In this document: in pieces, positions 5,391 through 8,413 of the stretch | Position numbering within the stretch: position 1 is the first letter of the stretch | Layout: the number at the start of each line of letters is the position of its first letter | From: Bigelowiella natans CCMP2755 | Taxonomy: Eukaryota; Protista; Cercozoa | DNA: 64,000 bases | Assembly: GCA_000320545.1 (NCBI GenBank) | Contig: ADNK01001083.1 | Span: 63,683-127,682 of the forward strand | Direction: 5' to 3' | Translations under genes and position numbers: made by a program | Notes under the pieces: model-generated | What the model was told of the DNA's origin: nothing | Seen by the model: the letters and a program-made list of their open reading frames with translations, nothing else | Database searches by the model: none

Positions 5391-5433
<43 letters not shown>

Positions 5434-5559
5434 TGACAAAATAAGCGCGAGCACGAGCTGCTTCTCGCAGGCTAGCAGGGTAGCACATTGTACGAGTCTG
5501 GCCAGCGGTTGCACGTGAATCTAACACAACGTTGCTAACATTGTTGCGCCGCAACGTGC

Positions 5560-5769
5560 AAAGAGCATGTGTATGTGTGTACATGTATCATGATTTATAA
5601 AATCGCACACACGCTAGACACGTGGCAAATCAATGAAAGGCATGCATGCTAGCATGATCTGGTGATATCCCTGCTAGCTAGCTAGATCATCTATTGCGTC
5701 GACGTGATGACGTGATGACGTGATGTGAAGTATATGTGGATTACGCAACCTAGCAACGTCTGCAGCTGC
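5560..5769. other. Palindrome-dense purine/pyrimidine-alternating tract in tail-to-tail spacer
   Basis: Contains CACGTG, GCATGCATGCTAGCATG, GCTAGCTAGCTAG, GTCGAC and ACGTGATG x3, between two converging stop codons. Confidence 0.6.
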
Positions 5770-7741
5770 TCACTTTGAGCACGCCACTTTATCCTTGATG
5801 ATAGCGTTCAAACAACTCCATCCAAATGGGTCGAGGCATTCGATTGGAGAGACAGACACCAACGCCCAGGACCAGCCTCCATGCGCAGAGGTATGTACCA
5901 TGATGGATCGTGTGCTTCCTAAGCTGCCATTGTGCCACTGCGCATGCGAGTTAAGTGCCATACCCATGCCGTATGTACTCCCTGGTATAATATAATTTAT
6001 TATGTAACACTGCGAAACATACGCGCAAACACACACACACACACGCACACACACACACACACATACAAATCTGATTTCATACAATAAAACACTATATTAT
6101 ATCTCTTCCTTGTTACATACCCACCTTTACAACCAGCCTTTCGCATTTCTTGTATCACTTCCTTGCTCAGCACCTTGCCCTTTTGCAGTGCAAACGATAA
6201 CCTTACTAAAGCGCGTGGAGTGATGTGCCATCCACCATGGCTATCCATTCTTTCGACCACTTTTGGCGGGAGCAAGTCTGGAGTCACGTTCCAGTGGAAA
6301 TTAGATTTTGGCTGACATTCAATTTTTGTTTGGGAGTCGGATGATCCAGGGATTGTAGATGTTGGCTCAGTGAAAGCGTACTGGCAAGCTGTCGGCTTCG
6401 TAACAAACGCCTCGCTGGGGCCTATTCCGAGCGGAGACAGGAGCTGTTTCTGCACCCATGTCTCATAGCTTGGGTAGTCATACTCCTTCTTTGTATTTAC
6501 TTCTTTCCCACCTGCTGAATACAAGGAATTGACTGTCAACAAATCAGATTCTGGCACCGAGCATGCACTCACAATTTACGCACCTTTGGGAACATTCACA
6601 GCTTCTATCACTCGCCCAAGCAGGCAGTAACCGAAATTCGAGTAGTGGAATGAGGATCCTGGTTTGCTATAAAGTTTGCGTTCGCCAAGAACGTGCGATA
6701 TCAACTCCAGTTGAGATTTCTCTGGGAAAGAGAACATTGGGTCTTTAGCGTCATTAGTCGGTAGCCCGCTGGTGTTGTTAAGGAGATGCCGCACCGTTAT
6801 CTCTGGAATTCTGTCATCGGCTAGGGTTTCTATTTTGACCAGACGTCGTAGGAGTGGTAACACTTTGTCGTCAAACCCCAGCTTCTCCTCATCTACCAAC
6901 TGTCCGACTGCCACGGAAGTGATCGTTTTGCTCACGCTGGCTATTCGTAGAGGCATCGAAGGTTTGAGGGTGCACCCATGCCGTGCGTAGCCCCAAGCTT
7001 TCGCGAGAACTTTGTTCTCTAGAGCATTGTCTTCGCAAAATGCAACTGAGAGGCCGATGCCGCCATGTTCTGCCATGAGCTCGATAGCAAGCTTATCAAG
7101 AGGAGTCTTTCCGTCGCTTGCACGCATCACATCGACAGCTACATCGTCTTTCGAATACTTAACTTCGATGGCGGGCATCAAGAATCCTATTGCTCCCGAC
7201 TCTCCAATGGTGGGGCTCTCCACAAATCTCCAGCCAACATCTGCCTTGCATGCGGAGCAAACAGCTGTTTCCACAACGCTCTTTCCTTGGGCTAGATCCA
7301 TATGACGTCGGTTTACGAAGGTGAGACCCTGGGGTTTATTCTACAGAACAGAAATAGCAAAAAGTATTTTGACTTCACTCTGAATTCATAGCATCGAATC
7401 ATCAGGTAATCGATCGTCGGAACAAATTGGGTACGAAAGCGCTCGGAATTCTATCTCCTAATCTAAGAACATTAACGAGAAACTTCAGGATTTGTGACAT
7501 CGAAATGTGTTGTTGCAATCTCAGAGGCATATTTTGTGTGGAGGAATGATATCGTTTAGATCACTCTATTCTGCACAAAGCGAACACAGCAACGCACCTC
7601 TTTCGGCACGAACACCTGTGCGGGGCTTCCATTCCATCTATGCCCTTTCGATTGCAAGACGCAGTCAGCCAGCAGCTTTCCACATCGAGAACATACTGCT
7701 TGTTTTTCCGCAGCATAAATGAACGAGAGTTTCGATGCCAT
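5770..7741 (-). CDS. Yippee/Mis18-like zinc-binding domain fused to a serine beta-lactamase-family (class C/esterase-like) hydrolase; 4 exons
   Basis: Exons about 7741-7598, 7340-6584, 6516-6121 and 5983-5770. N-terminus: CSRC..LA...SK.H.WNG.PAQVF then CSACKADVGWRFV. Hydrolase motifs: SxxK (IASVSK), HLLNNTSGL, PGSSFHYSNFGY (YxN), GGW, YGMG and WHNGS. Confidence 0.88.
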
Positions 7742-8413
7742 CGAGCTATCTCACCCCCCCCAATCCTCTTCTCTCGGCGCTCAAACAACGGAGTCTATGT
7801 TGTGCACTCGCATGCTCGCATTGACAATGGGCGTTACTGAGCTCTCGGTTCCATTACGTGCGGTTTGGTTGTTGCGACTGCATCAATTTGTCCGTTTTCT
7901 CAAGTAAGTTCAGGTCGCAAGTCGAAAAATCGAAGTTCGGCTCAGAATCGAAGAAGATCAGCCATGTTCATCAAGTCCCTCTACGTACTACAACAATCAT
8001 CGGAACACATTTATTGTTTATTTTTCTAGCCAAAGTTTTGCGGACTACTTCCAAGCATAAATAAATAGCTCAAGCTTCGCATGAATCATGCGACTCACTC
8101 ATCACGATAGGTCTAGGTCGTTCTTGGGGGAATTTTTCATCACGTTCCACAATGATGATTAGACTAATTCAACATAATTTTGTTCAAACGACAATAAAAT
8201 CCTGTCGCAGGACCAAAATCGGCTTCGTTTTGGGAAATGTTCGGGTAACAGAAGCTACCTCAACAGAGTCTACTGGAAAGCTCCTCAGTTTTACTGGCTA
8301 TTCATCCTCGTTGCTCTCCCCCCCCAACGGAAAAGATCCTACCCCTTCCTAGAACTGAAAGAAACGCAACAGGATACTATCCCCTTTCGCTCCGTCGATA
8401 GGTCTCTGGGCGA

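What the first reader, a model, noticed from the sequence alone, without database searches (positions are those of the whole stretch)
5770..7741. Yippee/Mis18-like zinc domain fused to a serine beta-lactamase-family hydrolase
Seen: exon 1 (AVCSRCGKLLADCVLQSKGHRWNGSPAQVF) splices in frame to NKPQGLTFVNRRHMDLAQGKSVVETAVCSACKADVGWRFV. This gives two CxxC pairs with the spacing and the C..C...VGW motif of Yippee/cereblon-CULT/Mis18 domains. It runs straight into a complete SxxK/YxN/HxG hydrolase. Established: Yippee-fold domains bind zinc and small ligands or partner proteins (YPEL5 in the CTLH ligase, the cereblon ligand pocket); beta-lactamase-family enzymes are mostly bacterial. Inference: I know of no described fusion of these two. 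The gene has only 3 introns and a ~750-nt exon, unlike its neighbours, which fits a bacterial-derived hydrolase that acquired a eukaryotic domain.
Basis: partly seen in the sequence, partly recalled or inferred. Interest (0 to 1): 0.75.

Follow-up and report, generated by a model that had tools for sequence, protein, structure and literature searches.

The report
Yippee zinc domain fused to hydrolase
This expressed gene of the alga Bigelowiella natans makes one protein that joins a small zinc-binding "Yippee" domain to a penicillin-binding-type serine hydrolase; I found this pairing in only a handful of protists and in no paper, and it could help show what Yippee domains bind.

Summary
Minus-strand gene 7741..5770 has four exons. 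RNA-derived contigs from three public runs remove exactly three GT..AG introns, including the claimed 7598/7340 junction. The ORF is 499 aa and equals public transcript protein P0214 apart from one residue. The JGI model (Bigna1 72958) starts at Met62, so it hides the fusion.

Residues ~125-499 are a PF00144 serine hydrolase (125 bits) with SxxK, YxN and HxG intact. Its fold is closest to D-amino-acid amidase, R61 DD-peptidase and Pab87.

Residues ~7-110 fall below Pfam's Yippee-Mis18 cut-off (17.9 vs 26.6 bits). Three other lines place them in the Yippee group:
- A family profile hits YPEL5 (E 1.5e-5).
- It matches a Yippee alignment (hhalign 99.1%).
- The model (pLDDT 88) matches YPEL5, Mis18 and cereblon (Z 12.3-10.7).

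The fusion is not unique. About 11-14 clusters among 1.84 billion carry it, as single ORFs in other eukaryotes. Both domains suggest a single origin. I found no description of it.

Most likely function (inferred): the zinc domain is a built-in ligand or substrate reader for a D-stereospecific amidohydrolase.

This is a new variant of a known kind.

The parts
7742..7878 (-). 5' UTR as far as the RNA contigs reach. It carries three short upstream ORFs (ATG at 7854, 7821 and 7813; 6, 8 and 10 codons) and an in-frame TGA at 7753-7751.
   Evidence: RNA contig X1 spans 7878-7598; uORFs computed; sequence.
7598..7741 (-). Exon 1, residues 1-48. It encodes the first half of the Yippee-type zinc domain: invariant F7, the first Cys pair C17/C20 (7682-7693) and the GHxWxG motif (H34, W36).
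7341..7597 (-). Intron 1 (257 nt, GT..AG). It lies inside the zinc domain.
   Evidence: The joint 7340/7598 is present in contigs of X1, X12 and X19.
6584..7340 (-). Exon 2 (757 nt), residues 49-300 plus one base. It encodes the second half of the zinc domain (Q66-G67, C76/C79 at 7248-7259, GWRF; domain end about 7155), a short linker, and the first half of the hydrolase with S183-x-x-K186 (6927-6938) and Y281-S-N283 (6636-6644).
6512..6583 (-). Intron 2 (72 nt, GT..AG).
   Evidence: Joint in three runs, cut +3 gives GT..AG. It agrees with P0001 and P0214, which read VPKGGKEV.
6125..6511 (-). Exon 3 (387 nt). Middle of the hydrolase, including the family-specific RMDSHGGW motif (R388-W395) and two low-confidence insertions.
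5982..6124 (-). Intron 3 (143 nt, GT..AG). It contains a (GT)n microsatellite.
5770..5981 (-). Exon 4 with the stop codon (5770-5772). End of the hydrolase, with H446-N-G448 (5926-5934).
5602..5769 (-). 3' UTR as far as contig X1 reaches.

Best explanation
The gene encodes a 499-aa protein with no N-terminal extension before the zinc domain, so it probably stays in the cytosol (no targeting prediction was run). The protein has two domains:
- Residues ~7-110 form a Cys4 zinc-binding beta-tent domain of the Yippee group. It belongs to a distinct subfamily marked by GHxWxG, QG and GW(K/R)F.
- After a linker of about 15-20 residues, residues ~125-499 form a penicillin-binding-protein / beta-lactamase-fold serine hydrolase of the S12 kind, with a complete catalytic set (Ser183, Lys186, Tyr281, Asn283, His446-x-Gly448).

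Shown here: the gene model, its transcription and splicing, both domain assignments, the conservation of the fusion, and what looks like a single origin.

Inferred: the hydrolase cleaves an amide or ester bond through an acyl-Ser183 intermediate, probably with D-stereospecificity like its nearest solved relatives. The zinc domain serves as a built-in recognition module. It would use the canonical beta-tent pocket (conserved F44, W85 and F87, plus the subfamily-specific H34 and W36) to bind a small ligand or a peptide end and so select or gate the substrate.

My odds: architecture and expression about 0.97; an active serine hydrolase about 0.8; the zinc domain as ligand/substrate reader about 0.45.
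For: Gene model:
- Splicing is seen in three runs of two organisms.
- The exon translations match public protein P0214.

Hydrolase:
- PF00144 at E 4.5e-36.
- The catalytic motifs are invariant or nearly so in 11 family members.
- The full-length model has pLDDT 84.9 and pTM 0.78. Its best structural matches are D-amino-acid amidase, Pab87, R61 DD-peptidase and alkaline D-peptidase.

Zinc domain:
- Model pLDDT is 88.3.
- Foldseek finds YPEL5 (E 6.9e-6), then Mis18 and cereblon.
- VIA-align gives Z 12.3 for YPEL5, 11.8 for Mis18 and 10.7 for CULT.
- The 20 nearest ESM Atlas models all collapse into one row, a Yippee (PF03226) cluster.
- The family profile hits YPEL5 in the PDB at E 1.5e-5.
- hhalign against a Yippee alignment gives 99.1%, E 1.2e-18.

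Fusion:
- It is conserved as one uninterrupted ORF in four genomic contigs from other eukaryotes.
- The hydrolase domains of all fusion proteins form one clade (SH-aLRT 99).
- Their zinc domains also group together.

Pocket:
- Three of the four aromatic-cage positions that Lupas et al. 2015 predicted for Yippee (PMC4287342) are kept as F44, W85 and F87.
- In the same subfamily the domain is fused to F-box and to RING plus PCMT, which are contexts of substrate recognition.
Against: - The B. natans protein itself scores below Pfam's Yippee-Mis18 cut-off (17.9 vs 26.6 bits).
- No activity, zinc content or ligand has been measured.
- I could not read model coordinates, so I do not know whether the beta-tent pocket faces the active site.
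- Yippee-type domains can also act purely as oligomerisation or docking modules (Mis18; YPEL5-WDR26).
- Three uORFs precede the start codon, and no peptide evidence for residues 1-61 was available.
- Between the two Bigelowiella sources, 6 of 11 coding differences change the residue. That is weak evidence for constraint at this short distance.
Confidence: 0.6

Rival explanations
1. The zinc domain is an oligomerisation module, as in Mis18. It makes the hydrolase a dimer or higher oligomer, and ligand binding plays no part.
For: Mis18 Yippee-like domains are among the best structural matches (Z 11.8 and 10.9). Their oligomerisation through this domain is documented (PMC4818781, listed). Several S12 enzymes work as oligomers, for example Pab87 octamers and LACTB filaments (entry titles).
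Against: By sequence profile the domain is nearer to YPEL5 (28 bits) than to Mis18 (12.5 bits). The conserved residues (F44, W85, F87, H34, W36) sit at the positions that form the ligand pocket in beta-tent proteins. No interface could be examined.
Confidence: 0.22
2. The zinc domain is a docking tag. It attaches the hydrolase to another protein or complex, for example a WDR26/CTLH-type ubiquitin ligase as YPEL5 does. This would regulate the enzyme's location or stability rather than its substrate choice.
For: YPEL5 bound to WDR26 is the best sequence and structure match. Relatives in the same subfamily are fused to F-box and RING domains.
Against: The canonical YPEL signature is replaced by a different conserved motif set. 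No partner is known, and nothing here bears on CTLH subunits in Bigelowiella.
Confidence: 0.1
3. There is no fusion protein. Translation starts at Met62 as in the JGI model, and exon 1 is only 5' UTR.
For: JGI model Bigna1 72958 (P0001) starts at Met62. Three uORFs lie upstream of ATG 7741.
Against: - The frame is open from ATG 7741 across the splice junction.
- Exon 1 encodes exactly the half-domain (F7, C17, C20, GHxWxG, A41, F44) that is conserved in every full-length relative.
- Those relatives encode both halves in one uninterrupted ORF.
- A domain starting at Met62 would lack two zinc ligands.
Confidence: 0.03
4. The enzyme is a true beta-lactamase or cell-wall DD-peptidase, kept for antibiotic resistance or peptidoglycan work.
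For: It belongs to Pfam 'Beta-lactamase', and R61 DD-peptidase is among the best fold matches.
Against: NCBIfam class C beta-lactamase scores 15 bits against a cut-off of 415, and AmpH scores 50 against 266. The third motif is HxG rather than KTG. The protein shows no signal peptide or other N-terminal extension before the zinc domain.
Confidence: 0.04

Closest known systems
Yippee / YPEL5 (Pfam PF03226; PDB 8qbn chain Y)
   Same: Beta-tent fold with two Cys pairs about 55 residues apart holding one zinc. It has the GW-x-aromatic motif after the second pair. YPEL5 is the best sequence-profile and structure match.
   Different: The canonical YPEL motifs (F-x-G-x-x-G, T-G-x-H, GWKY, QKYKEGK) are replaced by GHxWxG, QG and GW(K/R)F-x-SP. 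The domain falls below Pfam's cut-off. It is fused to an enzyme, whereas YPELs are single-domain proteins.
Mis18 Yippee-like domain (PDB 5hj0, 5j6p, 7sfz)
   Same: Same fold (Z 10.9-11.8).
   Different: Sequence similarity is only marginal (E about 1). Mis18 acts in centromere priming through oligomerisation, and no enzyme is attached.
Cereblon CULT domain (PDB 4v2y, 7bqu)
   Same: Same fold (Z 9.3-10.7). It shares the C-x-x-C-x3-GWKF stretch, whose W and F line the ligand pocket.
   Different: The other two cage tryptophans of CULT are absent. Here the domain is attached to a hydrolase, not to a Lon-like domain and DDB1 binder.
S12-type D-stereospecific hydrolases: D-amino-acid amidase (2dns), Streptomyces R61 DD-peptidase (3pte), Pab87 (2qmi), alkaline D-peptidase (4y7p)
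   Same: Same fold and the same SxxK / YxN / HxG catalytic set. These are the best structure and sequence matches to residues 119-499.
   Different: Identity is only about 20%. The family has its own RMDSHGGW motif and insertions. None of these enzymes has an N-terminal beta-tent domain; Pab87 has a C-terminal extra domain instead.
LACTB, the eukaryotic mitochondrial serine beta-lactamase-like protein (7v21, 7ulw)
   Same: A eukaryotic member of the same hydrolase superfamily (E 8.4e-9 over about 140 residues).
   Different: It is a distant relative. The nearest non-fusion relatives of this gene are bacterial-type proteins, not LACTB. The architecture differs.
RING + PCMT + Yippee-like proteins of Euglenozoa (found here: P0228 Euglena gracilis, P0242 Papus, P0339 Urceolus, P0283 Lacrimia)
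   Same: Their beta-tent domain belongs to the same HxW / QG / GW-x-F subfamily (a clade of 56 rows, SH-aLRT 98) and is likewise fused to an enzyme.
   Different: The partner is a protein isoaspartate methyltransferase plus a RING finger, and the beta-tent domain is C-terminal. I know of no description of these either.

Membership tests
Pfam PF00144 Beta-lactamase / S12-type serine hydrolase | Score above Pfam's gathering threshold (27 bits) | tested here: met
   P0214 scores 125.1 bits, E 4.5e-36, over residues 129-466. Exon 2 alone scores 100 bits.
Pfam PF00144 Beta-lactamase / S12-type serine hydrolase | Catalytic motifs SxxK, YxN and H/K-x-G present and conserved | tested here: met
   S183, K186, Y281 and N283 are invariant. 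H446 and G448 are nearly invariant in 11 family members.
Pfam PF00144 Beta-lactamase / S12-type serine hydrolase | PBP/beta-lactamase fold | tested here: met
   Foldseek E 2e-17 to 2dns, 2qmi and 1hvb, with TM by target 0.57-0.73.
Pfam PF00144 Beta-lactamase / S12-type serine hydrolase | Hydrolytic activity through an acyl-serine; D-stereospecificity | not testable with these tools
   Needs an enzyme assay.
Yippee/Mis18 (Pfam PF03226) | Score above Pfam's gathering threshold (26.6 bits) | tested here: not met
   P0214:1-125 scores 17.9 bits (E 0.0036). The best-scoring family members reach 19.9-24.3 bits (P0121, P0122, P0126, P0221, P0222), and others score lower or not at all. The hits that do appear cover the domain, and the stronger ones span both Cys pairs.
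Yippee/Mis18 (Pfam PF03226) | Profile-level homology to bona fide Yippee proteins | tested here: met
   The family profile hits YPEL5 at E 1.5e-5. In the library of 1.84 billion proteins, 118 of 140 further hits carry PF03226. hhalign gives 99.1%, E 1.2e-18; that target alignment was drawn from the profile's own hits.
Yippee/Mis18 (Pfam PF03226) | Two Cys pairs about 52-55 residues apart (zinc site) in a beta-tent fold | tested here: met
   C17/C20 and C76/C79 are invariant. Model pLDDT is 88, and Z is 12.3 to YPEL5. Zinc itself was not measured.
Yippee/Mis18 (Pfam PF03226) | Canonical YPEL sequence signature (F-x-G-x-x-G-x-A-x-L-F, T-G-x-H-x-V, GWKY, QKYKEGK) | tested here: not met
   It is replaced by GHxWxG-x2-A-x2-F, QG and GW(K/R)F-x-SP-x3-Q-x-GK. 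This is a distinct subfamily (clade support 98).
Cereblon CULT domain | Three-tryptophan aromatic cage | tested here: not met
   Only the CxxC-x3-GWKF stretch aligns to cereblon (E about 0.7-1.3). No tryptophans are seen at the other two cage positions.
MsrB / SelR | SelR profile match and a catalytic Cys near the C-terminal end of the domain | tested here: not met
   P0214 has no PF01641 hit. The fold match is weaker (Z 9.2). The family alignment shows no conserved Cys outside the two zinc pairs.
Class C beta-lactamase (AmpC) and AmpH / PBP4B equivalogs | NCBIfam equivalog cut-offs | tested here: not met
   bla_class_C scores 15 against 415, AmpH 50 against 266, and PBP4B 29 against 385.
LACTB | Orthology to the mitochondrial LACTB lineage | tested here: inconclusive
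   There is only a partial, distant match (E 8.4e-9 over residues 39-178 of the domain). Bacterial-type proteins score far better. LACTB was not placed in the tree.

The most novel reading that the evidence does not exclude
The HxW/QG subfamily of Yippee-type domains may be a reader of damaged or cyclised peptide ends, such as succinimide or cyclic imide, isoaspartyl or D-aspartyl residues.

In Euglenozoa this domain is fused to a RING finger and a protein isoaspartate methyltransferase (PCMT). [quoted passage not shown]

In Bigelowiella and a few other protists the same kind of domain is fused to a D-stereospecific-type serine amidohydrolase. On this reading the protein is a self-contained repair or clearance enzyme: it recognises such an end with the beta-tent pocket and cuts it off. 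The fusions would then act as Rosetta stones for the long-unknown biochemical role of Yippee proteins.
Probability: 0.12. Interest if true: 0.85.

Novelty: new variant of a known kind. Interest (0 to 1): 0.6.

Why it matters
Yippee/YPEL proteins are conserved across eukaryotes, yet what they bind is still unclear. Natural fusions often reveal a functional partner. Here a Yippee-type domain sits on a catalytically intact hydrolase, which gives an assayable read-out for what the domain recognises.

The architecture is invisible in public annotation for two reasons: the JGI model is truncated, and the Pfam hit is sub-threshold. Reporting it therefore adds a family.

The related RING-PCMT-Yippee proteins link Yippee-type domains to the chemistry of protein damage, where cereblon's related domain already works.

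Tried and rejected
- Pfam on exon 1 and exon 2 separately gave no zinc-domain hit. phmmer of the two half-domains against the PDB gave nothing, or only spurious C2H2 zinc-finger matches to the CxxCG stretch. Half-domains are too short.
- A word search restricted to residues 1-80 of P0001 found only P0001 itself. The relatives share too few exact words in this part; the whole-protein search found them.
- Feature search in the ESM Atlas with P0214 returned only bacterial beta-lactamase clusters. Clusters with under 50 members are not searched there.
- I could not identify the organism behind assembly GCA_014466275.1 (P0125): papers gave nothing and the locus titles carry no taxon. The flanking genes are eukaryotic.
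- Raw RNA reads of X22 cover only the 3' end (38 reads), so they say nothing about the junctions. The junction evidence comes from assembled contigs of the other runs.
- Rejected: read-through or a merged gene model as the source of the fusion. Intron 1 lies inside the zinc domain, and relatives carry single ORFs.
- Rejected: MsrB, CULT or class C beta-lactamase membership (see the membership tests).
- I did not submit my own joined translation to any search or fold tool. Public protein P0214 took its place.

Full report
**Gene model and expression**

The feature lies on the minus strand. ATG 7741 is preceded by an in-frame TGA at 7753-7751.

I laid four public runs on 5400-8100. Assembled contigs of X1 and X12 (organism A) and X19 (organism B) each skip 7341-7597, 6512-6583 and 5982-6124, all with GT..AG on the gene's strand. 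The longest contig runs from 7878 to 5602. Contigs that lack three precise introns must come from RNA, so the 7598/7340 junction is real.

There is one correction. Intron 2 uses the acceptor three bases downstream, so exon 3 starts at 6511 and the protein has 499 residues.

Raw reads of X22 cover only the 3' end and add nothing on splicing.

**Identity of the organism and of the protein**

The word search with exon 2 returned P0001, the JGI model Bigna1 72958 of Bigelowiella natans. It is 100% identical but starts at Met62.

The cluster of P0001 also holds P0214, a 499-aa MMETSP transcript product. My four exon translations lie in it in order: residues 1-48, 49-300, 302-429 and 431-499, with the two split codons between. 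There is one difference, L155P, and run X19 carries the same variant (7021 A>G).

I used P0214 wherever a full-length reference was needed. My own joined translation was never sent to a search or fold tool.

**Hydrolase domain**

- P0214 residues 129-466 match PF00144 at 125 bits.
- In an alignment of 11 family members, S183, K186, Y281 and N283 are invariant, and H446-x-G448 is nearly so. A family-specific RMDSHGGW motif is also conserved.
- The full-length model (pLDDT 84.9, pTM 0.78) matches D-amino-acid amidase, Pab87, R61 DD-peptidase, alkaline D-peptidase, SurE and LACTB. By sequence the closest solved chains are Pab87 and alkaline D-peptidase.
- No NCBIfam equivalog comes near its cut-off. 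This is neither an AmpC-type beta-lactamase nor AmpH.

**Zinc domain**

Searched as half-domains it finds nothing. On full-length proteins, PF03226 Yippee-Mis18 gives sub-threshold hits, and the stronger ones span both Cys pairs: P0121 23.5 bits, P0221 22.3, P0126 20.3, P0122 19.9, and P0214:1-125 17.9, against a cut-off of 26.6.

A profile of nine N-terminal domains hits YPEL5 in the PDB at E 1.5e-5. MsrB, cereblon and Mis18 follow at about E 1.

The same kind of profile (A2) was scored against 1.84 billion representatives and gave 202 hits at E <= 0.001. After the fusion family itself, 118 of the 140 listed hits carry PF03226, some at E 1e-58. hhalign of A2 against 62 of these gives 99.1% and E 1.2e-18. 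That target set was drawn from the profile's own hits.

The AlphaFold model of residues 1-118 is confident (pLDDT 88.3). Its matches are:
- Foldseek: YPEL5, Mis18 and cereblon, from E 6.9e-6.
- VIA-align without Foldseek: Z 12.3 (YPEL5), 11.8 and 10.9 (Mis18), 10.7 (CULT), 9.2 (MsrB1), 8.1 (DUF427), 7.3 (RIG-I CTD), 7.2 (Mss4). This is the beta-tent set described by Lupas et al. 2015 (PMC4287342).
- ESM Atlas: the 20 nearest models collapse into one row, a Yippee (PF03226) cluster.

**A distinct subfamily**

The domain lacks the canonical YPEL signature. Instead it keeps GHxWxG, QG and GW(K/R)F-x-SP. In a tree of 135 domain segments, all rows with the HxW and QG motifs form one clade of 56 (SH-aLRT 98). 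That clade holds the lactamase-fused, PCMT-fused and other rows.

Three of the four aromatic-cage positions predicted for Yippee are kept, as F44, W85 and F87.

**The fusion is a family, and it is rare**

The word search with P0001 found proteins of 453-586 aa that align over 97-98% of it. All carry both Cys pairs plus the hydrolase.
- One is from the Polykrikos kofoidii transcriptome in EukProt.
- One is from NCBI assembly GCA_014466275.1.
- The rest are from environmental assemblies.

In four genomic contigs the gene is one uninterrupted ORF flanked by eukaryotic genes: calreticulin, COMM domain, calpain, myosin and OTU.

The library-wide search added only fragments (P0222, P0223, P0225, P0288). 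That makes about 11-14 clusters at 50% identity.

The hydrolase domains of all fusion members form one clade (SH-aLRT 99). It is separate from 64 non-fusion relatives, and every one of those that carries a name is bacterial. The zinc domains also group together, though that grouping lacks a strongly supported branch of its own. Both trees are therefore consistent with one origin of the fusion.

The B. natans intron 1 lies inside the zinc domain, so the introns do not mark the fusion point.

**Literature**

Full-text searches for Yippee together with beta-lactamase, and for Bigelowiella together with beta-lactamase, found no description of this architecture. Lupas et al. 2015 mention no such fusion.

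**Function**

Shown: an expressed, conserved two-domain protein with intact zinc ligands and catalytic residues.

Inferred: it is a serine amidohydrolase, probably D-stereospecific, whose beta-tent domain reads a ligand or a peptide end.

Rivals: oligomerisation as in Mis18, or docking to a partner as in YPEL5-WDR26.

A bolder reading comes from the subfamily's other fusions. Euglenozoan proteins join RING, PCMT and this domain. A 2025 preprint reports that PCMT1 promotes formation of the cyclic-imide degron read by cereblon's beta-tent domain. The hydrolase fusion could act on the same class of damaged ends. This is speculation, at about 0.12.

**Limits**

- No coordinates of the models could be inspected.
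- There are no activity, zinc or peptide data.
- The trees are unrooted.
- Several relatives have unknown source organisms.

Noticed in passing
P0228, P0242, P0339, P0264, P0283, P0248 (proteins): Proteins of 750-925 aa join an N-terminal RING finger, a PCMT (protein isoaspartate methyltransferase) domain and a C-terminal Yippee-type domain of the same HxW/QG subfamily. The named sources are Euglena gracilis, Papus ankaliazontas, Urceolus cornutus and Lacrimia lanifica, all Euglenozoa. A 2025 preprint reports that PCMT1 makes the degron read by cereblon's related domain, so this looks like a Rosetta-stone fusion and deserves its own follow-up.
   Followed up: partly
P0224, P0227, P0234, P0253, P0255 (proteins): F-box proteins carrying one or two Yippee-type domains are among the nearest non-lactamase relatives. 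They look like candidate substrate receptors of SCF ligases built on a beta-tent domain.
   Followed up: partly
window 7301-7741: The public JGI gene model (Bigna1 72958) starts at Met62 (7301) and omits exon 1. The zinc domain is therefore cut in half, and public annotation shows only 'Beta-lactamase'.
   Followed up: yes
window 7813-7854: Three upstream ATGs in the 5' UTR open short ORFs of 6, 8 and 10 codons ahead of the main start. They may dampen translation.
   Followed up: partly
window 6028-6078: A (GT)n microsatellite interrupted by a few C/G changes lies inside intron 3. The read tool skipped 6017-6076 as a repeat.
   Followed up: no
window 5640-5745: Downstream of the stop codon, within the 3' UTR as mapped (5602-5769), lie a run of CTAG/GCTAGC/CATG palindromes (gatctagctagctagc, catgctagcatgcatgc) and a short tandem cacgtcat repeat. 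This matches the CTAG-rich DNA that earlier notes of this scan describe between converging genes.
   Followed up: no
window 5770-7741 versus run X19 (organism B): The second source differs at 11 coding positions. Six of them change the residue: K4R, Y110C, L155P, I330L, P383S and F407S. None touches a zinc ligand or a catalytic residue.
   Followed up: yes
L001 and L002 (GCA_014466275.1): Two contigs of one assembly carry the same gene order around the fusion gene (FMO-like, COMM domain, fusion gene, IQ protein). They are probably haplotypes or a recent duplication. The genome is compact, the fusion gene there is a single uninterrupted ORF, and GC is 38%. The organism was not identified.
   Followed up: no
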